From: Octopus sinensis
Lineage: Eukaryota
Length of the DNA stretch: 37,546 bases
Direction: 5' to 3'
Assembly (NCBI RefSeq): GCF_006345805.1
Contig: NW_021824672.1
Coordinates: forward strand, 1-37,546
Position 1 is the stretch's first letter. Each line of letters begins with the position of its first letter. Position numbers and translations under genes: made by a program. The notes below the pieces were generated by a model. It saw nothing but the letters and a program-made list of their open reading frames with translations. It was not told where the DNA came from and did not search any database. Positions 1 through 37,546 of the stretch are shown in pieces.

Positions 1-343
1 TGTGTATGTGTGTGTGTGCATTAAAATTGAGTTGTTATTATATAGCGTGTTTTAGACAAGGAACAGAATTGATGGGGAAACTAAATGCTGGAATTAGAAT
101 TAAATTTATTCTAGATTAAACAGAAACATCGGTGTCTGATAGTCCGCAATATTAATTTAAAATCGTTTCGCGGTACCTCGAGTCGGAGAAAGATGATTCC
201 ACAATTCCTTGCCAAAGGAGTTGCTCAGATGGTTTGTTTATATTGATCAAAAGATTCTACTGGACATGAACACGTTCCCTCTCTCCATCAAATCGTCATT
301 ACCTACACAGGTGTACAGTGTATCACTCGTCAGATGTCGAAGT

Positions 344-730
344 GGTTAAGGCGGCAATCTGACAGAAACGTTAGCACGCTGGGCGAAATGCTTAGCGGTA
401 TTTCGTCTGTCTTTACGTTCTGAGTTCAAATTCCACCGGGGTCGACTTTGCCTTTCATCCTTTCGGGGTCGATTATATAAGTACCAGTTACTTACTGGGG
501 TCGATGTAATTGACTTAATCCCTTTGTCAGTCCTTGTTTGTCCTCTCTGTGTTTAGCCCCTTGTGGGTAGTAAAGAAATAGGTATTTCGTCTGTCTTCAT
601 GTTCTGAGTTCAAATTCCGCCGAGGTCGACTTTGCCTTTCATCCTATCGGGGTCGATAAATTAAGTACCAGTTCCATACTGGGGTCAATGGGGTTCCATA
701 CTGGCCCCTCCTCCTAGAGTAGAGTAGAAA
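344..730 (+). mobile_element. SINE family B (tRNA-like head, 184-bp internal tandem unit x2)
   Basis: Head ggcggc..ctgacagaaacgttagc; unit ggtatttcg..gagttcaaattcc..ggtcgactttgcctttcatcc at 397 and 581; 12-bp TSD AGATGTCGAAGT at 332-343 and 731-742. Confidence 0.85.
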
Positions 731-932
731 AGATGTCGAAGTTGTTCTCCAACACCGAATCCCATAGAGGGCGCTGTCCAACGTTTCAGTGTTCATCACT
801 GGTTCTCAACCGGGGTGCATATGGCCCTTAGGGGTCCCTATAAGGTTTTATTGTTAAAATTTATCTGCAACAAACTCGTTATGCTTCTACAACACATACA
901 TTTTTTTTAAATGCAATCCCTAAAAGTATTTA

Positions 933-1100
933 ATTATTCTTTTACTTGTTTCAGTCATTTTGACTGCGCCCATAGTCGAATAAATCGACCCCTGGACTTA
1001 TTCTTTGTAAACCTAGTATTTATTCTAACGTTCTCTTATGTCGAACTGCTAGGTTACGGGGACGTAAACACACCAGCGTCGGTTGCCAAGCGATGGTGAG
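933..1100 (-). mobile_element. SINE family C, 3' half
   Basis: Reverse complement of the tail of the full copy at 34523-34920. Confidence 0.75.
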
Positions 1101-1105
1101 GACAC

Positions 1106-1136
<31 letters not shown>

Positions 1137-1206
1137 CACACACAAACACACACAACTGCTTGTTGTTTACACACCTGTCCTCGTTTATTGCTCTTTTGTA
1201 AATTCC

Positions 1207-1241
<35 letters not shown>

Positions 1242-2070
1242 TACACTAGCATTATGACCCATCGTTGCTGGGTCATAGTGCTAGTGCATGTATATATGAG
1301 TATATATATGTGTACATATTACATGTACATCTATATATATATACATCTACACATAAAATACAAAATACAAAGTTATATCTTGACATCGCTAGTGATAACA
1401 ATACTCAAAATATATAACAGAGTGGAATGTCTCTTGCAATTTCGATCAGTTGTATCTTGTCCTCCCTCTTGTATAGAAGTGTGGCTACAATCCAGCCTAC
1501 CTCTACCTCTGGGGAGACATTTTTAATTTTTATCCGGGACGTTCTACGTCCCGGATATAAAGGTAAAAATAAAATATTTTCACTTTGCAAGGTTCGAGTC
1601 GAATACTCCCTTACACGCTCCGTTGACTCGAACCTTGCTTCTATTGTGGCGAATTTACCGCCTCTGGTTAGATATCTTTCATAGTCGCACCAAGACACTT
1701 TTCGATGGTGCTTTCCTTCAGGTGTTCAAATCTTTTTTTTTCTCTACATCTTTTCTTTAATTTAATTTTTTATTTCGTTTGGTGGTGTTTGTCGGTGATC
1801 AATCCGAAATAGGTTTGTATTTCTTCCATTTTAATTTTAATGAGTTCGCGCCCGCCGACGGTTGCAGCGAAATTCATTTTTGGACTATTCCATTTTTGCA
1901 CACTAATTTTATTTTTAATTTATTGCCATTCATGTGAAACCACTTATTCAAGTTCAAGACATTGAGGCAATTTTATACCAATTGCTATTTTTACTTTTAA
2001 TTGCTATGTTACGATTTAATTTAGTTTGATTTTAATTATTGCTTACTACGTATAATTCAATTGTTATTAT

Positions 2071-2343
2071 TATCTCTAATTTTTATTGTTAAAGTGAAAG
2101 TATCTGACATAAAATAGAAAAATGTCTTTGTTTCACTTTTAACACGTAATACTGAAATATGAAAACATATGATATTGCTATGGGCTCGCCCTAGGCAGGA
2201 ATTTGAACATTTTTTTTGCCCATGAAACTACATGGACCCTAAGTAAGGCATGTGTAAAATTTGAATGAAATTGGTTGTGTAGTTCTCAAGTTTTAGGGAA
2301 ACACACAGACAGACACACATTCTCAGTTTTATATATATAGATA
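2071..2343 (+). mobile_element. Helentron/DINE-1-like non-autonomous element (tentative)
   Basis: End aaatttgaatgaaattggttgtgtagttctcaag...acacacagacagacacacattctcagttttatatatatag resembles HINE/DINE-type ends as I recall them. Confidence 0.35.
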
Positions 2344-2488
2344 TATACCGGAGTAAACACATAAATGTGAAACAAGGTGGAAAAAAGAGTAATCAAATAC
2401 CAGGAGTAGAGTAATATGCTTTATTTAAAACCAGTAGAAATTCAACAAAACCTGTTTTTCGGAGTTTATATATATATAGACATATTTA

Positions 2489-2722
2489 TCGGTTTTCAAG
2501 CGATAGTGGAAGGGGGAACGAACACAGACACACACACATACACACATGTATATGTATATACGAGGAGCTTCTTTCAGTTTCCATCTACCATACCACTCAC
2601 AAGACTGTGGTCGGCTGGAGGCTACAGTATAAGACTCTTGCCCAATGTGCGATGCAGTGGGACTGAACCCAGAACCATGTGGTTGGGAAGCAAGCTTCTT
2701 ACCACTCAGCCACTCCTGCCGC
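2489..2722 (-). mobile_element. SINE family C, 5' half
   Basis: Reverse complement of the tRNA-like head ggagtggctg..ggttcagtcccactg. Flank tatttaattat at 2735-2745 matches 927-937, a possible TSD shared with 933-1100. Confidence 0.8.
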
Positions 2723-2887
2723 TTTTCCTAAGAATATTTAATTATAAAAATATAATTTTGAAACAGTGAATGGGTATTAGGGTCCATCCAAGTGAAATAG
2801 GCATCGAAGGGGCCCAAAGGGGAAACAAGGGTTGAGAAACACTGGTGCACATGAATGTATTAAGTATATTCACAGACATATATACTT

Positions 2888-3254
2888 GGAGGCGCAATGG
2901 CCCAGTGGTTGGGGCAGCGGACTCGCGGTCGTAGGATCGCAGTTTCGATTCCCAGACCGGGCGTTGTGAGTGTTTATTGAGCGAAAACACCCAAAACTCC
3001 ACGAGGCTCCGGCGTGGGGTGTTGGCGAACCCTGCTGTACTCCTTCACCACAGTTTTCTCTCACTCTTTCTTCTCGTTTCTTTTGTACCTGTATTTCGAA
3101 GGACCGGCCTTGTCACGCTGAATCTCCCCGAGAACTACGTTAAGGGTACACGTGTCTGTGGAGTGCTCAGCCACTTGCACGTTAATTTCATGAGCAGGTT
3201 GTTCCGTTGATTGGATCAACTGGAACTCTTTCCGTCGTAACCGACGGAGTGCCA
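2888..3254 (+). mobile_element. SINE family A, full length
   Basis: A box tggcccagtgg, B box gtttcgattccc, tail gaactacgttaagggtacac..ccgacggagtgcca. Four near-identical copies in the window. Confidence 0.9.
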
Positions 3255-4176: not shown

Positions 4177-5190
4177 TCAGATATCATTTAAAAACGTATC
4201 AATTTTCTTCTGAAAATCTGCACCCAGAACTGCCCGCTTGAGTTCTTCATTATCCCGAGAAATATTTGGTTCCTCTGTTGTGCCAGACGCCAAATTATTT
4301 AGATTTTGGTCAACCATTTTCTCCAGTGTCCTCATACACATATCAACGTCTTCTGAATCTACAATAAAAGTTCCTTGTCTACGAATTCTTGGTCTCTGTT
4401 CAGTTTCAGGCAAAATCGTCAGATCTTTGCTTGGATCAAACTGGTTTCCTCTGCTTGGAACATTGCTGTTTCCAACCGAATAATTTATTCCCGGAGAGGA
4501 ATTTTGAAGAGGGTTTACCGAGGAGCCAACTCTGCTATTTACCGAAGTTCGATGAGGATTTTCGAAACTGTTACCCAATGTTTCCGCTTTAGCCGAATTG
4601 TTCCAAACATTTGAATCGGCACCTGCACCTGCTCCTCCTGTCTCTCCTCCCACTCTTCCCTTTTCTGCTGGTTCTCTATTTTTCCTCTCTCTTGGCTTTC
4701 TTCCGTCAATATCCCCTACTTTATTTCCCCCTCTTCCTTCCCTTCCAGAATATTCTCTTTCTGAATTTTGTCGAACCTTTCCCGAAGTACTGTTCGTATG
4801 TGTAGCTTCGGCTGCTGCTGCTGATGCGAGTAGTGACGATGATGATGGTAATGGCGGTAGTGATGTTGCCGACAAAGAGTTCGTAGAATGAGGCTGGTTG
4901 TGTCTTGGATTATCATCGACAGCAGTTGGATTGCTTCCTCGAACCGGTTGTCTTTGGGATTGGTGAGAAGAGTGGATTGGACATTTCTTGTCTTCTAGAG
5001 GACAAGGTTCGCGGCAGAACGCCGCAAACTCATCATCATAACTATCGTGAGCAGCTGCGGCAGCGCCGCCACCGACGCCGCCACCGCCGCCGCCACCTCC
5101 ACCGCCATCGCTAACACCAGCACCAACACTAATACCATCAACATCACCATTTTCCTTGTTATTCTGTTTATGATTCCGTTTATTATTATT

Positions 5191-5238
<48 letters not shown>

Positions 5239-5355
5239 GGTAGGTTGGGGCTCTTCAACTGACCTCACAGATACCGAAGAAACGGTATCCGTTCGATTTT
5301 CTTCCGGCTGTTTTTCTTCTTCGCTATCTTCCCTTCTTTCGATTGCATCAGAACC
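4177..5355 (-). CDS. Terminal coding exon (392 aa + stop) of an unidentified gene; low-complexity, likely disordered, with poly-Asn/Gly/Ala tracts
   Basis: The 363-aa ORF stays open upstream to a strong acceptor (ttttttttctttttgtag|GGT, AG at 5357-5356) in phase 0, adding GSDAIERREDSEEEKQPEENRTDTVSSVS. Stop TGA at 4179-4177. GC is higher than the flanks. No domain recognised. Confidence 0.85.
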
Positions 5356-5399
5356 CTACAAAAAGAAAAAAAATATCATATACATATATATATAGTAAA

Positions 5400-12492: not shown

Positions 12493-13479
12493 CAGGGCCG
12501 TCGCTAAGCCCCTGCAACCCCTGCGGATCAGGGGGCCTACGCGGTTGAGGGGCCCCATGTGAAGATCAAAGTACGTAGATGAGTTATCTATTTACTTTGG
12601 TTATAATGGTGAACAAGAATTAAGCAATGCTAACCGAAAACTTCAAGAAATAAAATGGTAATACACTGTACCTGCAAAAGTTCTTGTAAAAATATTGCGT
12701 TGTAACACGAACATCCCCACCTAAATATGTTCTTTAGGATAACGTGAAATATTGAACTTCAGATAGAATAAAGTAAAATATAACTATGAATAAAAGATGC
12801 GTAGATAATAAATTTTGAAGGTGACGATCTGACAGAAACGTTAGCACGCCGGGCGAAATGCTTAGCGGTATTTCGTCTGCCGCTATGTTCTGAGTTCAAA
12901 TTCCGCCGAGGTCGACTTTGCCGTTCATCCTTTCGGGGTCAATTAAGTAAGTACCGGTTACGCACTGGGATCGATATAATCGACTTAATCCCTTTGTCTG
13001 TCCTTGTCTGTCACTTATGTGTTTAGCCCCTTGTGGGTAGTAAAGAAATAGGTATTTCGCCTGCCGTTACGTTCTGAGTTCAAATTCCACCGAGGTCGAC
13101 TTTGCCTTTCATCCTTTCGGGGTCGATTAAATAAGTACCAGTTACACACTGTGGTCGATATAATCGACTTAATCCGTTTGTGTGTCCTTGTTTGTTCTTT
13201 CTGTGTTTAGCCCCTTGTGGGTAGTAAAGAAATAGGTATTTCGTCTGTCTCTACGTTCTGAGTTCAAATTCCACCGAGGTCGACTTTGCCTTTCATCCTT
13301 TCGGGGGTCAATAAATTAAGTACCAGTTGTGTACTGGAGTCGATCTAATCGACTGGCCACCTCCCCAAAATTTTCGGGCCTTGTGCCTAGAGTAGAAAAG
13401 ATAATCAATTTCGATTGAAGGAATGGGGACTCGAAAGGAAAAGTTTCACTGGGGCTCTAAAAGTCAAGTGACGCGCCTG
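12493..13479. mobile_element. hAT-type MITE interrupted by a SINE B
   Basis: Ends cagggccgtcgc.. and ..gtgacgcgcctg; 8-bp TSD attacaga/attacagg. Confidence 0.6.
12818..13402 (+). mobile_element. SINE family B with three 184-bp units
   Basis: Units start at 12867, 13051 and 13235; imperfect TSD agataat(a/c)aattt. Confidence 0.9.
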
Positions 13480-17195: not shown

Positions 17196-17798
17196 TTAAG
17201 AAGTATAGGCTTAAAAACTATACATATGTCTATGGTATATACTAAGCAAGCTCGCTCAAAATGTTGCCCTGGAGAAACATTTATAGAATTGTTTGGTTTC
17301 TAACTATCTGAAAATGACAAATGAAGGGGCACGGAGAAAAATTTGCAATGCATAGAACTATTCATCTGGTTTGTTAAATGTGGCACTTGGTGTATCGCCT
17401 TTCAGTAAGTAAATTTATCCTTAGTGCTACTGTACGTATTGAGTAGTTAGCATGCTTCATACGTTCGACACAGTCCAATGCATAGAAATAAATAATTTAT
17501 AAATGAATAAATAACACAACGGATGATGTAACAGAAGTTAAGTAACCCAGAGGAGACAATAAAAGAAATTATACATTATATATTTGCTTTCAAACTTGCT
17601 GAGCAGGAAAAGCGCTGAGGAAGTCCGTTGATCGAAACTACTCACTGCGAAGAAATGAATATTATTTTTTTCGATATTTATACATCACAAGAGAGAACGT
17701 ACAAAAAACAAAAAAAAAAACAAAACAAACAAAAGACGTAAACGGGTGTGTAAACATCAAACAGATGTATTAGTTTGACGTTCGGGAAATGAGAAAGT

Positions 17799-19908: not shown

Positions 19909-20512
19909 AAATATATTTCTTTATTGCCCATAAGGGGCTAAACATGGAGGGGACAAACAAGGACAGACAAAAGGATTAAGTCGATTACGTCAACCCCTGT
20001 GCGTAACTGGTACTTATTTAATCAACCCTGAAAGGATGAGAGGCAAAGTCAACCTCGGCGGAATTTGAACCCAGAACGTAGCGACAGACGAAATACCTAT
20101 TTCTTTACTGTCCTCAAGGGGCTAAACACAAAGAGGACAAACAAGGATAGACAAAGAGATTAAGTCGATTATATCGACCCCAGTGCGTAACTGGTACTTA
20201 ATTTATCGACCCCGAAAGGATGAAAGGCAAAGTCGACCTCGGTGGAATTTGAACTCAGACCGTAAAGACAGACGAAATACCTATTTCTTTACTAACCACA
20301 AGGGGCTAAACACATAAGGGACAGACAAGGACAGACAAAGGGATTAAGTCGATTATATCGACTCCAGTGCGTAACTGCTACTTATTTAATCGACCCCGAA
20401 AGGATGAAAGGCAAAGTCGACCTCGGCGGAATTTGAACACAACGTAGCGGCAGACGAAATACCGCTAAGCATGTCGCCCGGCGTGCTAACGTCTCTGCCA
20501 GCTCACCACCTG
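19909..20512 (-). mobile_element. SINE family B, three-plus units
   Basis: Tandem reverse-complement units; TSD aaaggaaa(t/c)gta at 19897-19908 and 20513-20524. Confidence 0.9.
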
Positions 20513-20790: not shown

Positions 20791-21396
20791 GAGGGTGGGG
20801 GTGGGGAGGAGTGTGTATCCGGCAGGGTGGCTTCATTCGAAAGCTAAAACGATGTAAGGAAGTGCATTGTGACTAGCGATGTAAAACAAAATCCGATAAT
20901 CTGATCAACACATTGATACACACACACACACACACACACAACACACACACACACACACACACATACATACACACACACACATATATATATATATACATAT
21001 ATATAATTCTTTAATTATTTCATTACTTTACTTTTTTCAGTCATTTGACACGCTACACACTTAGAACATTAAAACTTAGAGTTCCAGGTCAATCTGTGCC
21101 CACCATCTTCACTCACCGTTCGTTACTATAGCAGCAGTCCGGATACACATTGATCTGACCGCGTAGAGTATATATATATATTATATAATTATATAAAGTA
21201 GATGTATTATAAATTGTTATATAGACCAGAGAGAACATTACAGAGGTATATAAAATATAAATATAATTCTTATATATCACTGATATATATTTGTTATATA
21301 TTATGGATATATATTATAGTGATATGCTAAATAATACATTATATTGATACACAACTTCGTAAATTAGATCTGTTTGGTGGGTATACAGAGTAAGAG

Positions 21397-21773
21397 GGAG
21401 TACGATGGCCCAGTGGTTAGGACAGCGGACTCACGGTCATAGGATCGCGGTTTCGATTCCCAGACCGGGCGTTGTGAGTGTTTATTGAGCGAAAATGCTT
21501 AATGCTTCACGAGGCTCTGGCAGGGGGTGTTAGTGAACCCTGCTATACTCTTTCACCACAGTTTTCTCTCACTTTTCTTTCTGTTTCTGTTGTATCTGTA
21601 TTTCAAAGGCCCAGACTTGTCACACTCTGTGTCTCATTGAATCTCCCTGAGAACTACATTAAGGGTACACGTGTCTGTGGAGTGCTCAGCCACTTGCACG
21701 TTAATTTCACGAGCAGGCTGTTCCGTTGATCGGTTCAACTGGAACCCTCGTCGTCGTAACCGACGGAGTGCCA
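21397..21773 (+). mobile_element. SINE family A, full length
   Basis: Same as 2888-3254. Confidence 0.9.
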
Positions 21774-22010
21774 TGATGCATATATATATATATATATATA
21801 TGTATATGTATGTATGTATGTGTGTAGGCATACATACAGGTAAGGCTTGTATATCACCTAGATTCATTTTATTCTCCATAGTTCCGATTCCTATCTGGGA
21901 TTTTAACTCTTAAGTCTTGCTGAGATTAATCTCAACGACCACAAAACAACAACATAAGCATTAATAGCTGTAACGGCTGCCAGAAAAGCAGCAAAACAAC
22001 TAGAAGCAGT

Positions 22011-22570
22011 TGGGTGCTGATGAAGGGGAACCCCGCCTCCCCGAACTATGGCATATATACACATTACCCATTCTTGTCTTCGATCTCATTGTTTACATCT
22101 GACGTCCCGATACGAAAAGTTGTAGTCAAAACATTAGTGCTGGTTATAATTTCTGTAGAAATAACCTTTAAAAATAATGTAGAGAGCACTGCTAACACAG
22201 TAGAACGTTGTGCTAACTTATAAAAACATTATGACTTATAAAATACTTATAAAATACTTTATGGTGTATTTTGATTGCATAACGAAATACCACGTGCCTA
22301 CAAGGCATTAATGTCTACATAGCAGCTCCAGGAATGCGTTTAATATGTAAATTGGTATCTCAAATAACTTAATACCAGTGGCTATATAAGCAATGTGTTC
22401 AGAGGCGAGAGTGGGTTAAGTCGCTGATGATGAAGGAGAAAAAACTCCGAAAATTGGTATATACACTCATTACCCATTTTTGTCTTCGATCTCATTGTTT
22501 ATTTACATTTGACGTCTTGATGACAAGAAATCAGTCCTGGTTATAATTTCTATGGAAATAACCTTGACAA
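22011..22570 (+). repeat. Two diverged direct repeats about 406 bp apart, each starting with a hammerhead-like motif
   Basis: ttaccca..gtcttcgatctcattgttt..ctggttataatttct..gaaataacctt at 22064 and 22470; CTGATGA..stem..GAA(A) at 22017 and about 22424. Confidence 0.7.
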
Positions 22571-22609
22571 ATTAAGGTAACCATTATACGTTAGTTATCA
22601 CTATCTTGT

Positions 22610-22988
22610 ATCTTTTTACTAGTTTCACTCATTAGACTGTGGCCATGCTGGGGCATCACCTTGAAGAATTTTTAGTCAAATGAATCGACCCCAGGACTTA
22701 TTTTATTGTTAAGCCTCTTACTTATCCTATCTGTCACTTTTGCCTAACCGCTATGTTACAGGGTCCTAAACAAACCACCACCGGTTATCTAGTTGTGGTG
22801 GTGTTCGTGGGAGGTGGGGGCGGGGCAAATACAAACAGAAAAACACACACACACATACGCCGGGATTTTTTCAGTTTCCGCCTACCAAATCCACTCAATG
22901 TTTTTGGCCTGCCCTAGGGTTTAGTGGAAGATACTTGCTCTAAGTGCCCACACAGTGGAGCTGAACCCGGAAGCACGTGGTTGAGAAA
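22610..22988 (-). mobile_element. Diverged SINE family C
   Basis: gactgtggccatgctgggg..tttcagtttccgcctaccaaatccactc..gaacccggaagcacgtgg. Confidence 0.75.
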
Positions 22989-23016
22989 CATGCAGTAATA
23001 AAGAAACCATATCTAC

Positions 23017-23619
23017 CTGTCACTCAATATTTTCATGAACAGCTAAGATTCGTCTTTGAAGGAGAACTTTTTGAGCCAGTGGAATGTTGTAGTCTTGATT
23101 GTTGTTGACAAAAGAGCCACTTCGAGTACGTTTGGATCGAGTTCGTAAACGTGGCTTTTCTACCACTATATCGGTTGAACTTTCATTACTTGTATTAGCC
23201 CACCCTTGCCGTACCCCTTCAAAGCGATTTCCTCGCTCTAACGAAGTACCCGCCATATTTAAATCGTTCGTTTCAAACCGAGGTACAACTGGACCAACGT
23301 CCATATTCAACTGGAAAGGATGTCCTGCTAAGTATGTACTATACACTGGCTGTAGTGGTTTATTATACGACGACGGGAAATCGTTGGATGCGAATGTATT
23401 TGTAATCAGTTCATTGTTTTGATGTAAGAAGTCCATTTCTGTTATGAAACTTGAGTTGCTGTCGCAATGTGTTGGTTCTGGGGTCGGAGTTCGTCTGGCA
23501 TCAGTCGTTTCTTTGGTTAAATGCGTGATATCAACACTTTCACTTGAATCCGAGTCATCCCAGAATTCAAAGGTGTTCTCAGCTCTATCAGAAGTCTGTG
23601 GAGGATTGTTACAAGGGTC
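23017..23619 (-). CDS. Internal coding exon (603 bp, phase 0/0) of probably the same gene, with TGA at 23022-23020
   Basis: The 138-aa ORF extends 61 open codons upstream (DPCNNPPQTSDRAENTFEFWDDS...) to acceptor cttttattcctag|GAC. The best donor CAG|GTAGAT lies 3 nt after the TGA. Linkage to exon 5355-4177 is inferred from strand, phase and composition. Confidence 0.75.
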
Positions 23620-23996
23620 CTAGGAATAAAAGTAAGGGTAACATTTCACTATTTTCAGATCCCAACGTTTTTTTTTGTGAAATTTTTCTTTCTGCGTTTA
23701 TTTTTTTGTTTTTACTCACAAAACAAACTACTACTTAGAATGATAGATTTCTTTGTGCTTATGAACATATGTGTATTTACACGGTCACGTATATACACTC
23801 AGGGGGAGAGAATTTTCAGTTGCAGACTGCAATATTTGTAATCTAAGACCATCTTATCTTCCCTTATTTTTTGCCAGTTTAACGTCTTCAAACACTAGAG
23901 AGTGCCACTCGTGTTGGACGAGCATTTGTCACTTTGACAGTTAACGTGTAGGCCCATTTTCGGCCCCTTTTTGCGTTAGCTAAGTTTCGAACTTAC

Positions 23997-24053
23997 TGGA
24001 ACCCAAATAGCCCGTGTACCTTTTTGTTGTGGCGATCGCGGTATTACGGATGT
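23997..24053 (-). CDS. Small 57-bp phase 0/0 exon (TSVIPRSPQQKGTRAIWVP)
   Basis: Acceptor tttcattgtcgcag|ACA and consensus donor CCA|GTAAGT. It joins in frame to exon 23619 across a 377-bp intron. Confidence 0.55.
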
Positions 24054-24379
24054 CTGCGACAATGAAATACTACCATTTCCTTAGCTTCTTCCTTCGTTAG
24101 GACATACAGAAGGTGTAGAATAGAAGAGAGAATTTACGATTCTCTGATTATTCAAATGGTTTTGTACTTTGTTGTACGTGGGGATTTGGTTTTGCCATAC
24201 TATTGTATATCTTCGTCATTAGGGGAGGGCACGATAGGACAGCATTGCGTCTGTAATTTTAGCGTAGATGGTGGTCATAATCGATAAACTGTGAATAATC
24301 ACCATGTGTATCTATGTATCCCTGTTTGCATGTATGTATATCTCTATCTATCTGTACGTAAGTAAGGCTATATATATAC

Positions 24380-24426
<47 letters not shown>

Positions 24427-24429
<3 letters not shown>

Positions 24430-24660
24430 GGCAAGTAAGGAAACAGAGAGAATTTTATATCCTCCCCGTTTTCTTACTTGCCGTATAAATCATGGATAAA
24501 CCACTCTTTTACCCCCGTCCATATATAATACTCAATTGCGAGATTGCCATGCAATGACTAGCACTCGACTATGAACAATTAGCTACACTACCAGCAATAT
24601 ATTGGATACATACTATCCCTTAGTTGGTTTCTCAACCTCTAACTCACACAGATATATATA

Positions 24661-24695
<35 letters not shown>

Positions 24696-24917
24696 GGCAA
24701 GTAAGGAAACAGAGAGAATTTTATATCCTCCCCGTTTTCTTACTTGCCGTATAAATCATGGATAAACCACTCTTTTACCCCCGTCCATATATAATACTCA
24801 ATTGCGAGATTGCCATGCAATGACTAGCACTCGACTATGAACAATTAGCTACACTACCAGCAATATATTGGATACATACTATCCCTTAGTTGGTTTCTCA
24901 ACCTCTAACTCACACAG
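24427..24917. repeat. Exact 266-bp-period tandem duplication bounded by (TA)n
   Basis: 24427-24651 matches 24693-24917. Confidence 0.95.
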
Positions 24918-25880
24918 ATATATATATAATTATATATATATATATATAAACACATATGTATACAAATATGGCTATATTTATGTGTGTGCATGCATGCATC
25001 TCTCTCTCTCTCTCAATATATATATATAGATATGTATATATATGTACATATATATGTGTATATGTATATATATATATATATATACACACACACTCACAAA
25101 TATATATTTCATGTTATGCTTGGAAACGATGCGTGTTACCAGAATTTTCGACTCGAGTAAAATAGAAACAACAACTTCGTCGTCAGAGTATCCGTGCGAA
25201 TGAAGTCAAGTGAGGCAAATTATTACTGGCATCAAGTTGTGTGAATTATAAATAATAAAGATAATCAAGAACTGATATTTTGAACTCATTTAATACGTAC
25301 GTTGCAGATCATTATGTAATATGAAGTAGGAATACATATCTTACGCAAGACCTTCCTCAGTTAATACATTTAAAAATTTTAAGATGTTTTAGCTGAGGAA
25401 GATCTTCATTCATTTTCGGGGTTGATAAAACACTGGGGTCAATGTAATCAACCCATACCCTTCTCCAAAATTGGACCCTTGGGGCAAAATTTGAAACCAC
25501 TATTATTATTATTTTATACATATATATTCATATATACATGCATACATACATGCATAATACATACACACACACACATATATCTTTCACCATTTTACATCAG
25601 TGAATAATATATATATATACACACACACGCTCTACTCCATAACCTATAAAACAATCTGAAGGCTCATGTTTTAAAAATTATGTTGTTTCATGCCTCAGAA
25701 ACATTGAAAATACATATTCCCTTAAATTATTTCCAAGAATCTGGGGATTGCAGAGCCCTAAGGCAGAGATTCTTCCATAGTTCTGAAAATTCCGTGTACT
25801 CAATAAGCCCAATTCCACAGTTTCGCCTGTCAAAAGATATGCGTAGCTCTATCTTGTTTTAAGCCCTGAACTCCTTATTA

Positions 25881-26002: not shown

Positions 26003-27021
26003 ATTCCACCCCTCCCCAGGTTGGATCACTGTCGATTCCTCCCAGAAGAGAATGAGACAGTAAGATGAAGACAAAAATTCACCGCAGTTCTTGACTGGTA
26101 TTTTATTTTATCAACTCTGTAATAACAAAATCCCATGTCAACCTCGGTAGCTTTTGATCTCAAAGCGTAGAGAGTCGCAACTTATTTATCTGTCGCATAA
26201 TTGCCGTTTTGTTATTTGTGATGTACGGATTATGTTATCCAATTCGCTGGTGATATGTAGAGTGTGGTATGTGTGTGTGTGTTGTGTTGAGGGTATACTA
26301 TTGAAAGTTTAGCCTTGCATTGATAGTGTCACGCAACGCTATTTGGGGAACTGGGTAGTATAGTGTTGTGTGATTTTAAAGATGTCTCTGTTCACGATTT
26401 TCTCCATAGTAACAAGCACACAAAACACCAACCGCCATAGAAAAAAATCCACCGTCTCCTTGTTTCAAGAAGGCCAAGATTGTGTCTTGCGCTTGGAAAA
26501 AGAGTGGGTGCAGAAAGTACTTGCAGATCAAATGTTATAATGATAAACACTTGTACGAGGCAATTACTGCTTTTTAAAACTTTCAAGCAGGTAAACAGGG
26601 GAAAGTGTTAGATACCTAGAGAGTAGAGAGCTTGCATGTCTCGAGCGAGAGTCTTCTTTCCCTATGTACATTTAAATTATCATGTGAAAATACATACATA
26701 TGTTCATGTCATATAAATGTAAATTTAATGTACAAATTTGCTATTAAATTATTGAGTATTAATTGAAACGGCTGTAAGAATAGAAGATTGCCAATTTGTT
26801 AATAATAAATAATTGTTAACTTCCTTATTCTTATTTTCTTTTCATCTTTCAACTGGATATAAACTTTATGCTTAATATACACCAATTGTTTTAAGATAAT
26901 TTCATTCCCCCAACAATACTGGGTATTGAACCAGTATTTCCTTGGATGCACCCATCCCTCCGCGAGGTTAACTTATCCTCTAGTTAAATGTATATACATA
27001 CATACATATATATGTATATGC

Positions 27022-27390: not shown

Positions 27391-27910
27391 TGTGTGCACA
27401 TACATTTATACTGACTATTAAAAGGCTGTTGGCTCTCTTCAGCTCCGGGATCGCGCTCGCGTTGTTAGCCCGTTTTAACACCATCATCTGTCAACTTCCG
27501 TTGTCAGATGGTCGTGTTAAGCAAACAAAACCCCTACCACCACCATGCTTATTTCAGGAACCTTGTACTTTGAAGGATTCTTGACATCCTCCCGGTCAGT
27601 GATGTGGGTCAATAAAAAACCGAGGGGTTTATCGGAGTGAACGGATTTTTGTTCCAGTTCTCGATGTGGTATTGATATTTTACGTGAATCAATACGACAA
27701 ACTATATCGATATAACCAAGTAAATAGATATGTGAAAAATAAACATTTGAGGAAACATCAAAGTAGACGTTATCAATGTATTATGTTGCAGTTATGGCAA
27801 CCAGATCGATATATACCTGCCTCTTATCGAATTGATTTGTCGCTATATGCCCGCTGATTGATTAAAAACGCCCTCCCCCATAGAAATGTAACTATATCTG
27901 TTCCGACTGG
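27391..27910. repeat. About 500-bp direct repeat, copy 1
   Basis: Aligns to 30991-31476 (offset 3600 at start) with scattered substitutions and indels. Confidence 0.9.
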
Positions 27911-30990: not shown

Positions 30991-31476
30991 TGTGTGCACA
31001 TACACTTATACTGACTATTAAAGGGCGGTTGGCTCTCTTCAGCTCTGGGATCGCGCTCGCGTTGTTAACCCGTTTTAACATCATCATCAGTCAACTTCCG
31101 TTGTCAGATGGTCGTGTTAAACAATCTCCTCCCCATCATTATGCTTATTTCAGGAACCTTGTACTTTGAGGGATTTTGACATCCTCCCGGTCAGTGACGT
31201 GGGTCAGTAAAAAATCGAGGAGTTTAGCGGATTTCATGGATTTTTGTTCCAGTTCTCGATGTGTTATTGATATTTTACGTGAATCAATACGACAAACTAT
31301 ATCGATATAACCAAGTAAATAGATATGAGTAAAATAAACATTTGAGGAAACATCAAAGTAGACATTATCAATGTATTATGTTGCAGTAAATGTCTCTTAT
31401 CGAATTGATTTGTTGCTATATACCCGCTGATTGATTTAAAACCCTCTCTATATGTAACTATATCTGTTCCGACTGG
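30991..31476. repeat. About 500-bp direct repeat, copy 2
   Basis: See 27391-27910. Confidence 0.9.
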
Positions 31477-31793
31477 CACAGATATAGAAGAACTTTATCT
31501 TAATAACTGACAAGGGAGGTAAGACTCCTCAGCATCCAGGTATAGCCAGATCACCTGATTTTGCATTTTCACTAATACTCTTCAGTGACTCACTCTCACC
31601 CAGCCGTCTTGGGTTAAACTTAGCTCACCTTGTCAATTTCCAAGTCATTCACTAAGATAAAGTGCTTCTTGTGGCTATGAGCTGTTTTAACCTCTTATTT
31701 CTAGCAATAGTGCTACTGAATAGTGTCTCTAATCACTTTATTGACGTATATATTTCTGCCAATCGGTTGTAAAATTGCGAATAAGCCACCCCA

Positions 31794-31794
<1 letters not shown>

Positions 31795-31878
<84 letters not shown>

Positions 31879-33216: not shown

Positions 33217-33426
33217 TCAATATAATTTTAATTCTTTAGCTATGTAATGCTATTTTTTTTAGGCCTGCAACTACCTATATTAATGTTTCTGTTATTATCA
33301 ACTATTTATTTTGCCTCCGATAATAATAGAAATATTAATATCTTATAAATATTCACTTCCGAATAATTTTACTGCTGATTCTCTCTCTCTCTCTTTCTCT
33401 CTCTCATATATATACATATCTCGCTG

Positions 33427-33798
33427 TGGTCGGCTACGACGACGACGATTCCAGGTGATCCGATCAACGGAACAGCCTGCTCGTGAAATTGACGTGCAAG
33501 TGGCTGAGCACTCCACAGGCACGTGTACCCTTAACGGAGTTCTCGTGGAGATTCAGAGTGACACAGAGTGTGACAAGGCTGGCACCTTTGAAATACAAGT
33601 ACAAAAGAAACAGGAAGAAACATTGAGAGAAAGTTGTGGTGAAAGGGTACAGCAGGGTTCACCACCGCCCTCTGCCAGAGCCACGTGGAGCTTTAGGTCT
33701 TTTCGCCCAATAAACACTCACAACACCCAGTCTGGAAATCGAAACCGTATGCTACGACCGCAAGCCCACTGCCCTAGCAACTGGGCCATTGCTCCTCC
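33427..33798 (-). mobile_element. SINE family A, full length
   Basis: Reverse complement of 2888-3254; explains the 204-aa ORF at 33311. Confidence 0.9.
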
Positions 33799-33921
<123 letters not shown>

Positions 33922-34045
33922 ATAATATATAATATATATATATATATATATATAATATTATTAGAGACAAAACCACTATTTTGCAAAACAAACAAGGAAA
34001 GACTTAATCAATACATGAAATTTTAATAAAAAGTCAAAATAACCG

Positions 34046-36478: not shown

Positions 36479-37516
36479 TCTCTTACTATATTCTCATCAT
36501 CGTACAGTGAGTGGTTGTGCTAATCAGTGGAACGACCATAATAAAAACAGACAAGAGGCGATAAGCAGTGATGTGCTTAAATATAAACTTATAACCAGTT
36601 CAAATATGATTGAGACATATTTGTACCCGCAAGAAAGCCAGTCCTCCTATTTTTGTTATGGAAAAAACAGAGGGAAAACGTAAAGCCTAAAAGTATTATG
36701 CTTTTTGCCTTTTTTTGTGGTATTTATTTCGTACCGAGTTAGAGACACTCCCTTGTCATTTTTGTTATCAAAAATTAAGTAAACGAAGAATTGGTGTTTG
36801 AAACACACCAAGTCATTTCGAAGCGACTACCCGGACTGATTTATTACATTAAAATAAAAACAAAGCAAATTTCTCACTTGTATATTTGCTATTGCTTTTC
36901 TTAACTTTTATTAGCATAATTATATTTTTTTTCTATCGGAAATCTATCTCTGCGAAATTTCATTAAAAAAAGATTTTTTTTCAGTAAGTTATCATTGCCT
37001 GCCACCAAGCCTCGTATGTGCTCGCATTCTGCATCTCTTGTATTAATCGTCTCTGGATTTCTCTTTTATTCTCCTTACCCCTGTCTCTAAATGATTTCAA
37101 GCGTTACTGGAGAAACAAACCAACCAACTAACCAATATTTCTATCAGCTGTTTTCATATAAAAATGAGGTGTATTAGTATTTATGGATGTTGGAGGGATG
37201 TTTTATATATATATTTTACCGAAGTGTATCGACGAAGGATGTAAACACCGTTAAGAAAACAGAGGAAAAAAAGAAAACCCTAAAACTAAGATGCTTGCTG
37301 CCGCTGTTTTATATTCTTTTGATATTTATTCTGTACCGAGTGAAAGACACTCCCTTGTCATTTTTGTCATTTTTGTCATCAGAAATGCAGTAAACGAAGA
37401 ATTGGTCTTTGAAAGTCAGCATTAATCAAGGAAACTGTAGTTTACCACTTGAGATGTATGGAACAATACCCGAAACGGGAATCAAAACTGTATCGCAAGC
37501 ACTACTTTACAATGTA

Positions 37517-37546
37517 CGAGGGGTGTATGAAAAGTTTCGAGCCTTC
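37517..37546 (+). mobile_element. Start of a mariner-type TIR, cut by the window edge
   Basis: TA|cgaggggtgtatgaaaagtttc, similar to the termini at 16699 and 35730. Confidence 0.55.

What the first reader, a model, noticed from the sequence alone, without database searches (positions are those of the whole stretch)
23011..23030. Single in-frame TGA one codon before the donor of an otherwise phase-0 exon chain: possible readthrough or A-to-I stop recoding
Seen: the minus strand reads ATT GAG TGA CAG|GTAGAT. Exons 24053-23997, 23619-23017 and 5355-4177 all join in phase 0. Spliced, they give one frame broken only by this TGA, followed by 392 more codons. Established: UGA-C is a leaky stop context; A-to-I editing turns UGA into UGG (Trp); coleoids recode mRNA extensively; a stop within about 50 nt of the last junction escapes NMD. 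Inference: the locus could make a short and a long isoform switched by editing or readthrough. Mundane alternatives are a CGA>TGA nonsense allele, an assembly error, use of the weak GA|GTGACA donor with an unseen phase-2 exon, or two separate genes.
Basis: partly seen in the sequence, partly recalled or inferred. Interest (0 to 1): 0.72.

Follow-up and report, generated by a model that had tools for sequence, protein, structure and literature searches.

The report
Conserved stop in alternative octopus exon
The TGA is the normal stop codon of the short form of an uncharacterised octopus gene, conserved across octopods, and the long reading frame 17.6 kb downstream is reached by skipping this exon, so no stop-codon recoding is needed.

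Summary
The sequence is as described: on the minus strand, ATT GAG TGA CAG|GTAGAT at 23028-23011, then a 392-codon frame at 5355-4180. The recoding interpretation is not needed.

The window is Octopus vulgaris-like DNA, about 98% identical to OX597830.1. Annotated models show one gene with two 3' coding exons:
- O. vulgaris and O. bimaculoides have a 255-aa protein: exons 1 and 2 (56 aa) plus exon '3a' (23619-23023), ending at this TGA.
- O. bimaculoides also has a 449-aa protein with the same 56 aa joined directly to '3b' (5355-4180).

Both exons accept from the same phase-0 donor of exon 2, which lies about 120 nt beyond the window's right end. That explains the 'phase-0 chain'.

The TGA is identical in four Octopus-like sequences, and Argonauta hians has a stop at the same codon. 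This rules out an assembly error or a nonsense allele.

One twist: a more divergent relative (Logan contig, species unidentified) has AGA CAG|GTATAT at the same position, with no stop. The GT after the TGA therefore looks like the donor of a once-internal exon.

For editing, the 5' G is unfavourable and I found no convincing local RNA structure. No SECIS was found. Whether 3a still splices to 3b is untested.

The parts
23020..23619 (-). Exon '3a': 199 sense codons plus the TGA stop (23022-23020). It is the C-terminal coding exon of the 255-aa short isoform.
   Evidence: Searches give the sequence and translation. P0006 (O. vulgaris, 255 aa) residues 57-255 map to 23619-23023 at 99% identity. 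The O. bimaculoides 255-aa product ends at the same codon. dN/dS is 0.35-0.40 against a third octopus.
23020..23022 (-). The TGA stop codon. It is conserved at this codon position in all five octopod sequences examined.
   Evidence: The context GAG TGA CAG GTA GAT is identical in the window, O. vulgaris L006, O. bimaculoides L001 and the third octopus L003. Argonauta hians has CAA TGA AAC at the same codon. L005 has AGA there.
23011..23019 (-). CAG|GTAGAT, a 5' splice-site-like sequence directly after the stop. It is probably the donor of a formerly internal exon. Whether it is used today is unknown.
   Evidence: It matches 7 of 9 positions of the CAG|GTAAGT consensus (read). L005 has CAG|GTATAT at exactly the same codon distance, 17 codons after the LAQK motif, and no stop. 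It is absent in Argonauta.
22980..23022 (-). A 43-nt block from the stop onward that is unusually conserved. It could be 3'UTR or the intronic flank of an alternative exon.
   Evidence: 43 of 43 positions are identical to O. bimaculoides and 41 of 44 to L003. Flanking introns are 89-91% and 83% identical. P is about 0.01 and 0.05 under intron-like divergence.
4177..5355 (-). Exon '3b': 392 codons plus a TGA stop (4179-4177). It is the C-terminal coding exon of the long isoform and is low-complexity (N-, G- and S-rich) with a conserved C-terminal ~110 aa.
   Evidence: Searches give the sequence. It is 81-85% identical to residues 57-449 of P0001 (XP_014789739.1, O. bimaculoides). Argonauta has the same exon with a phase-0 acceptor and a conserved C-terminus. 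dN/dS is 0.41.
5356..5390 (-). Polypyrimidine tract and AG acceptor of exon 3b.
   Evidence: The sequence is ...gatattttttttctttttgtag|GGTTCT. The boundary matches the start of the P0001 match.
23997..24053 (-). It is not a conserved coding exon and is part of the intron between exon 2 and exon 3a.
   Evidence: It is not in the P0006 or P0001 models. It has a 1-nt insertion in O. bimaculoides, and its acceptor AG is AT in L003.
37400..37546 (-). Intron sequence just downstream of exon 2. The real exon 2 (18 codons, donor ATG|GTAAGT) and exon 1 (ATG, 38 codons) lie beyond the window's right end.
   Evidence: Window 37543 aligns to L006 12991, exon 2 is at L006 12818-12874 and exon 1 at L006 10001-10114.

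Best explanation
This is the 3' half of one uncharacterised, largely disordered cephalopod gene on the minus strand. It has two alternative C-terminal coding exons. Exons 1 and 2 encode 56 aa and lie just beyond the window's right end. Exon 2 ends in phase 0 and splices to one of two exons. Splicing to 3a (23619-23020) gives a 255-aa protein that stops at this TGA. Splicing to 3b (5355-4177) skips 3a and gives a protein of about 448 aa. The TGA is therefore an ordinary, conserved stop codon. The 'phase-0 chain' exists because 3a and 3b share the same upstream donor. The CAG|GT after the stop is best read as the donor of an exon that was once internal. A divergent relative still has AGA CAG|GT there, and in octopods the codon before it became a stop. 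These points are shown: both acceptors, both annotated isoforms in O. bimaculoides, the conserved stop, and purifying selection on both exons. These points are inferred: that the same two isoforms are made in this species, and that the ancestral exon was internal. One point is unknown: whether the short-isoform mRNA is polyadenylated in the downstream intron or still splices from 23017 to 5355, which would make 3b its 3'UTR.
For: -: the O. vulgaris 255-aa protein P0006 is 99% identical over 23619-23023 and ends at the TGA.
- the O. bimaculoides locus L001 has two products with the same start, 255 aa ending at 17532 and 449 aa ending at 26438.
- both products share the 56 N-terminal residues, followed by 3a or by 3b.
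- the TGA and its context are identical in four Octopus-like sequences.
- Argonauta hians P0003 (40% identity) ends at the same codon.
- Argonauta has the 3b exon about 1 kb downstream, with a phase-0 acceptor.
- dN/dS is 0.35-0.41 for both exons.
- L005 has a 246-codon open exon bounded by AG and CAG|GTATAT, with AGA where octopods have TGA.
- exons 1 and 2 lie off-window.
Against: - No transcript data could be reached for this species. The isoforms rest on other groups' gene models in O. vulgaris and O. bimaculoides, whose RNA support I could not inspect.
- The O. vulgaris annotation has only the short form.
- Argonauta annotates 3a and 3b as separate genes.
- The 'formerly internal exon' inference rests on a single 1.1-kb genomic contig from an unidentified species. 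That exon's splicing is itself only inferred.
- The donor and the 43 nt after the stop are perfectly conserved among Octopus species. This also fits continued use of the donor.
Confidence: 0.8

Rival explanations
1. Penultimate-exon architecture with low-level recoding. Exon 3a still splices from CAG|GT (23017) to 3b (5355), so the TGA lies 3 nt before the last junction. A fraction of ribosomes read through UGA-C, or a fraction of mRNAs are edited UGA>UGG. Either route would give a protein of about 648 aa (56 + 199 + X + Q + 392) that restores the presumed ancestral full-length form.
For: - The frame is open across the junction.
- The donor-like site is at the same position as an exon end in L005.
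- The donor and the next 40 nt are 100% conserved between the window and O. bimaculoides.
- UGA followed by C is a relatively leaky context (established knowledge).
- Stop-loss editing is a recognised category in coleoid editome pipelines (PMC8382921).
- The spliced context folds slightly better than shuffles, z = -1.96.
Against: - The long ORF is already explained by 3a skipping.
- No annotated model in three species joins 3a to 3b.
- Argonauta keeps the stop but has lost the GT donor, so the fused form is not conserved across octopods.
- The target A has a 5' G, the least favoured ADAR neighbour (established knowledge). PMC8382921 mentions only UAG>UGG.
- The pre-mRNA fold is unremarkable, z = +0.5 and +0.9, and no inverted repeat among the 25 longest of 457 pairs listed covers the site.
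- The phase compatibility is a frozen consequence of the shared exon-2 donor, so it is not evidence of selection.
Confidence: 0.06
2. The TGA is a nonsense allele, a sequencing error or an assembly error in this individual.
Against: The same TGA in the same 15-nt context occurs in independent assemblies of O. vulgaris and O. bimaculoides and in two Logan contigs of a third octopus. Argonauta has a stop at the same codon.
Confidence: 0.01
3. These are two separate genes. 3a ends one gene, and 3b belongs to an independent downstream gene with its own promoter and start.
For: The Argonauta annotation calls a separate 265-aa gene over the 3b region. The O. vulgaris annotation has no protein containing 3b.
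Against: - 3b has no in-frame ATG until its last 50 codons, and it starts at a strong acceptor in phase 0.
- In O. bimaculoides the 449-aa RefSeq protein uses the same first 56 aa as the short form.
- The Argonauta model looks ab initio, because its range begins inside a GT microsatellite.
Confidence: 0.06
4. The UGA encodes selenocysteine.
For: It is an in-frame UGA near the end of a coding exon.
Against: No SECIS element was found anywhere in the window at Rfam gathering score or at E<=1. There is no redox motif around the site, which reads ENIE-U-Q. Annotated orthologues end here.
Confidence: 0.005

Closest known systems
Alternative 3'-terminal coding exons, or a stop-carrying penultimate cassette exon ('splicing-accessible coding 3'UTRs', Preussner et al. 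2020, PMC7392665)
   Same: One gene gives two C-termini. Including an exon that carries a stop gives a short protein, and skipping it lets the last exon be translated. If the 23017 donor is still used, the last exon serves as 3'UTR in one isoform and as coding sequence in the other.
   Different: In the described cases the switch is mostly a frameshift caused by a non-triplet penultimate exon. Here the exon is in frame and the switch is a stop codon one codon before its 3' end. I have not shown that 3a is spliced to 3b at all, so it may simply be an alternative terminal exon with its own polyadenylation site.
Programmed stop-codon readthrough (for example the UGA-C/UGA-CUAG genes of Drosophila and mammals; PMC3840789, PMC5868278)
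   Same: A UGA followed by C, with an open in-frame continuation.
   Different: In known cases the extension lies directly after the stop in the same exon and shows its own coding conservation. Here the continuation needs a splice 3 nt after the stop. The downstream coding signature is fully explained by another isoform. The unspliced extension is 31 codons of SINE-containing sequence.
A-to-I stop-loss editing (UAG>UGG in coleoids, PMC8382921; PSC genes and DBF2 in Fusarium, PMC4817773, PMC13123824)
   Same: An in-frame stop that one A>I change would turn into Trp, in an animal lineage with very heavy recoding.
   Different: The codon is UGA, so the editable A follows a G, whereas the documented sites are UAG. 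I found no convincing local structure, and no RNA data were available.

Membership tests
Gene with alternative C-terminal coding exons (alternative last exon or stop-carrying penultimate exon) | Two protein isoforms share upstream exons and differ in the 3' coding exon | tested here: met
   The O. bimaculoides locus has 255-aa and 449-aa products with the same start and the same first 56 aa. These are followed by 3a or by 3b.
Gene with alternative C-terminal coding exons (alternative last exon or stop-carrying penultimate exon) | The stop in the upstream alternative exon is a genuine, conserved terminator | tested here: met
   There is a stop at the same codon in the window, O. vulgaris, O. 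bimaculoides, a third octopus and Argonauta. Annotated proteins end there.
Gene with alternative C-terminal coding exons (alternative last exon or stop-carrying penultimate exon) | Both alternative exons are under protein-level purifying selection | tested here: met
   dN/dS is 0.35-0.40 for 3a (against L003) and 0.41 for 3b. C-terminal motifs are conserved as far as Argonauta.
Gene with alternative C-terminal coding exons (alternative last exon or stop-carrying penultimate exon) | Transcripts with exon2-3a and exon2-3b junctions in this species | not testable with these tools
   No RNA-seq is accessible. Exact-protein look-ups of window ORFs in Logan found nothing.
Programmed stop-codon readthrough | Coding-type conservation downstream of the stop that no other isoform explains | tested here: not met
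   The coding signal in 3b is explained by the 449-aa isoform that skips 3a. The unspliced extension is 31 codons running into a SINE.
Programmed stop-codon readthrough | A leaky stop context conserved across species | tested here: inconclusive
   The context is TGA-C in four closely related Octopus sequences, where the whole flank is conserved. It is TGA-A in Argonauta.
A-to-I stop-loss editing | The editable A is in an ADAR-favoured context (5' U or A; UAG is typical) | tested here: not met
   The site reads G-A-C, and a 5' G is disfavoured (ADAR neighbour preference is established knowledge). PMC8382921 names only UAG>UGG.
A-to-I stop-loss editing | Double-stranded RNA around the site | tested here: inconclusive
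   Pre-mRNA folds give z = +0.51 and +0.9, and the spliced context gives z = -1.96. P(paired) of the target A is about 0.7. None of the 25 longest inverted repeats listed covers the site.
A-to-I stop-loss editing | An A/G difference between DNA and RNA at 23020 | not testable with these tools
   No read data are available.
Selenoprotein gene | A SECIS element in the 3'UTR | tested here: not met
   No SECIS match in the window at gathering score or at E<=1.

The most novel reading that the evidence does not exclude
Octopus may keep splicing exon 3a to exon 3b through the ancestral donor, which would put the UGA 3 nt before the last junction. A regulated fraction of messages would then bypass the stop, by UGA-C readthrough or by editing at an unfavourable G-A site. 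This would rebuild the ancestral protein of about 648 aa, giving three proteins from two exons. My evidence does not exclude this, because no transcript, ribosome or peptide data could be reached. The donor region is perfectly conserved among Octopus species.
Probability: 0.05. Interest if true: 0.6.

Novelty: already known. Interest (0 to 1): 0.15.

Why it matters
Mostly this is a cautionary case. Two exons that join in phase 0 across an in-frame stop look like recoding when the shared upstream exon lies outside the window. Here existing gene models of O. vulgaris and O. bimaculoides already annotate the TGA as the stop of a 255-aa protein. O. bimaculoides also has a 449-aa isoform that reaches the downstream exon by skipping.

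One small evolutionary point may be worth keeping. An in-frame, once-internal exon appears to have gained a stop at its penultimate codon before Octopus and Argonauta split. That change turned one protein into two alternative C-termini. The old donor survives in Octopus and has decayed in Argonauta. If the donor is still used, this would be a clean natural example of a last exon that serves as both coding sequence and 3'UTR.

The gene has no recognisable domain and is known only from cephalopods, so its functional significance is unknown.

Tried and rejected
- **Pfam:** both pieces and all orthologues gave nothing above threshold. The RefSeq name 'merozoite surface protein 2' reflects low-complexity similarity only.
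- **N-terminal 56 aa:** I searched the window for them with tblastn and found nothing. Synteny with O. vulgaris then showed these exons lie off-window.
- **Word-indexed protein searches with 3b:** the first was swamped by poly-N and poly-G words. A second, restricted to the C-terminal 123 aa, again found only the O. bimaculoides protein.
- **Exact look-ups of window ORFs in public assemblies:** the 363-aa and 138-aa ORFs are not on record.
- **Selenocysteine:** no SECIS was found.
- **Editing substrate:** local folds and the listed inverted repeats showed no convincing duplex at the TGA.
- **Species behind ERR3431203 and SRR11869390/1:** literature searches failed. Only the neighbouring run ERR3431204 is documented, as Mytilus coruscus. 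From memory, the same laboratory also sequenced the cuttlefish Sepia pharaonis, but I could not verify this.
- **Polyadenylation signals downstream of the TGA:** AATAAA occurs at 22707, 22503 and 21873, and ATTAAA at 22344. In 60% A+T DNA this carries no information.
- **The weak GA|GTGACA donor:** joined to 3b, it gives a stop after about 29 codons (read), so I rejected it.

Full report
**Observation.** On the minus strand the window reads ...CAT GAA AAT ATT GAG TGA CAG|GTAGAT. The TGA is at 23022-23020 and the GT at 23016-23015. The exon beginning after cctag| at 23619 translates to 199 sense codons, the TGA and one more codon. At 5355, after a long pyrimidine tract and AG, a frame of 392 codons runs to a stop at 4179-4177. 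The coordinates, the frame and the 'single TGA' are therefore all correct.

**What the locus is.**
- The composition, the SINE arrays and the microsatellites look like an octopus genome.
- The 392-aa piece is 81-85% identical to residues 57-449 of the O. bimaculoides protein P0001. Its accessions are XP_014789739.1 and XP_014789740.1, and it is named 'merozoite surface protein 2 isoform X1'.
- The first 56 residues of P0001 are not exon 3a.
- The 199-aa piece is 99% identical to residues 57-255 of P0006, an O. vulgaris 'hypothetical predicted protein' of 255 aa that ends at this TGA.
- In the O. bimaculoides locus L001, two products share one start. One is 255 aa and ends at the orthologue of this TGA. 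The other is 449 aa and ends at the orthologue of 4177.
- tblastn places exon 1 (38 aa), exon 2 (18 aa), exon 3a and exon 3b in that order.
- The arithmetic fits: 255 = 56 + 199 and 449 = 56 + 393.
- This is therefore one gene in which exon 2 joins either 3a or 3b. Both must start in phase 0 because they share exon 2's phase-0 donor (ATG|GTAAGT).

- The window is about 98% identical to the O. vulgaris chromosome OX597830.1.
- Window position 37543 aligns to L006 12991, and exon 2 is at L006 12818-12874.
- Exon 2 therefore lies about 120-170 nt beyond the window's right end, and exon 1 about 2.9 kb beyond it.
- That stretch has a 1-nt insertion in O. bimaculoides, which breaks the frame, and has lost its acceptor AG in a third octopus.

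**Is the TGA real and conserved?**
- The 15-nt context GAG TGA CAG GTA GAT is identical in four sequences. These are the window, O. vulgaris, O. bimaculoides and two Logan genomic contigs of a third octopus that is 83-84% identical in protein.
- The Argonauta hians protein P0003 (GAB1603742.1, 40% identity) ends at exactly the same codon...ENIQ TGA.
- A nonsense allele or an assembly error is thus excluded.
- Exon 3a is under purifying selection, with dN/dS 0.35-0.40 against the third octopus. Exon 3b has dN/dS 0.41.
- The most conserved part of 3a is the motif YN(I)PLAQK..LQRR just before the stop. This suggests a functional C-terminus.

**The twist.**
- The 1.1-kb genomic contig L005 (Logan, run ERR3431203) carries a more divergent orthologue of exon 3a, 31% identical (P0004, E = 1.3e-7 against 1.8 billion proteins).
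- There the exon is a 246-codon open frame, AG|GAA ... AGA CAG|GTATAT, in phase 0 at both ends.
- Counting from the conserved LAQK motif, both L005 and Octopus have 17 codons before the GT. L005 has AGA (Arg) where octopods have TGA.
- The GT after the octopus stop is therefore unlikely to be a coincidence. It is most simply the donor of an exon that was once internal and coding throughout.
- Octopods acquired a stop at the penultimate codon before the Octopus-Argonauta split.
- In Argonauta the donor has since decayed to TGA AAC GAG GGC. The 3b exon persists there about 1 kb downstream, with a phase-0 acceptor and a conserved C-terminus.
- Two caveats apply. The species of ERR3431203 could not be established, so the direction of change is inferred from the shared donor and not from a known outgroup. 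The L005 exon end is also inferred from sequence only.

**Recoding hypotheses.**
- Editing: the A of UGA is preceded by G, the neighbour ADARs like least (established knowledge).
- Squid editing sites show the usual neighbour preferences (PMC4384741).
- The coleoid pipeline that handles stop-loss editing mentions UAG>UGG only (PMC8382921).
- Local folding of the pre-mRNA around the site is no better than shuffled controls, z = +0.51 and +0.9.
- The hypothetical spliced context is marginal, z = -1.96.
- The 25 longest of the 457 inverted-repeat pairs found in 21000-25500 are all TA microsatellites, and none covers the site.
- Readthrough: UGA-C is a relatively leaky context. However, the continuation needs the 23017>5355 splice, which no annotated model contains. 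The coding signature of 3b is already explained by the skipping isoform.
- Selenocysteine: no SECIS was found at any threshold.
- None of these readings is needed, and the editing reading is disfavoured by the site's context.
- One fact keeps a small door open. The 43 nt from the TGA onward are 100% identical between the window and O. bimaculoides and 93% identical to the third octopus, against 89-91% and 83% for the flanking introns. That fits a 3'UTR, or the conserved intronic flank of an alternatively spliced exon whose donor is still in use.

**Mechanism, with confidence.**
- I put 0.8 on the model in which the TGA terminates the short isoform and 3b is translated only when 3a is skipped.
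- Within that model, I cannot decide between two routes for the short mRNA, and I hold them about equally likely. It may end by polyadenylation downstream of 3a, or it may splice on to 3b, leaving the stop 3 nt before the last junction and 3b as its 3'UTR.
- The second route would resemble the 'splicing-accessible coding 3'UTR' architecture (PMC7392665).
- Functional recoding that produces a 3a-3b fusion gets about 0.05.

**The gene itself.** It has no Pfam domain. It is rich in low-complexity N, G and S runs, and I found it only in cephalopods. Its function is unknown.

**Verdict.** The stop and both isoforms are already present in public annotations, so I rate this ordinary. It carries a minor evolutionary curiosity and one cheap decisive test, namely counting junction reads.

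Noticed in passing
window 12867-13354 and 19914-20463: Two arrays of a 184-nt SINE-like unit (2.6 and 3.0 copies) lie in opposite orientation about 6.5 kb apart, both inside the 3a-3b intron. Their consensus units are reverse complements of each other. They could form a long intronic duplex in the pre-mRNA, which is a typical target for ADAR hyper-editing and could influence exon choice.
   Followed up: partly
window 23619-23023 compared with 5355-4180: Synonymous divergence from O. bimaculoides is much lower in exon 3a than in exon 3b. dS is 0.039 (5 changes in about 130 sites) against 0.14, and the flanking introns diverge by about 0.09-0.11 (Fisher p = 0.004). The effect is absent in the comparison with the third octopus (dS 0.26). 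It may be chance, or a constraint on an alternatively spliced exon.
   Followed up: partly
window 22980-23022: The 43 nt starting at the stop codon are 100% identical to O. bimaculoides and 93% identical to a third octopus. That is more conserved than the exon itself. A SINE-like element starts right after this block, at about 22993-22710.
   Followed up: partly
window 27451-27910 and 31051-31797: Both segments match the same single-copy stretch of the O. bimaculoides intron (L001 13537-14311), at 91% and 84%. This indicates an internal duplication within the exon2-3a intron in this lineage.
   Followed up: no
There is also a 2-kb TA/TG microsatellite stretch with G+C of about 0.20 and strong GC skew.
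   Followed up: no
L001 28625-36438 (O. bimaculoides, downstream of the gene, opposite strand): The neighbouring gene downstream of exon 3b encodes a CFAP90-domain protein (PF15074). Window positions 1-2895, which may hold its orthologue, were not examined.
   Followed up: no
L005 (Logan ERR3431203): The species of this contig is unknown. The adjacent run ERR3431204 is the Illumina data of the Mytilus coruscus genome project. The high similarity of the motif SESVDISHLTK...RTPTPEPT to Octopus argues for a cephalopod. From memory, the same laboratory sequenced Sepia pharaonis, but I could not verify this.
   Followed up: partly
window 33311-33925 (+): A 204-aa ORF with a non-repetitive middle part, flanked by TA repeats, lies inside the exon2-3a intron. 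It was not searched and may belong to a repeat element.
   Followed up: no
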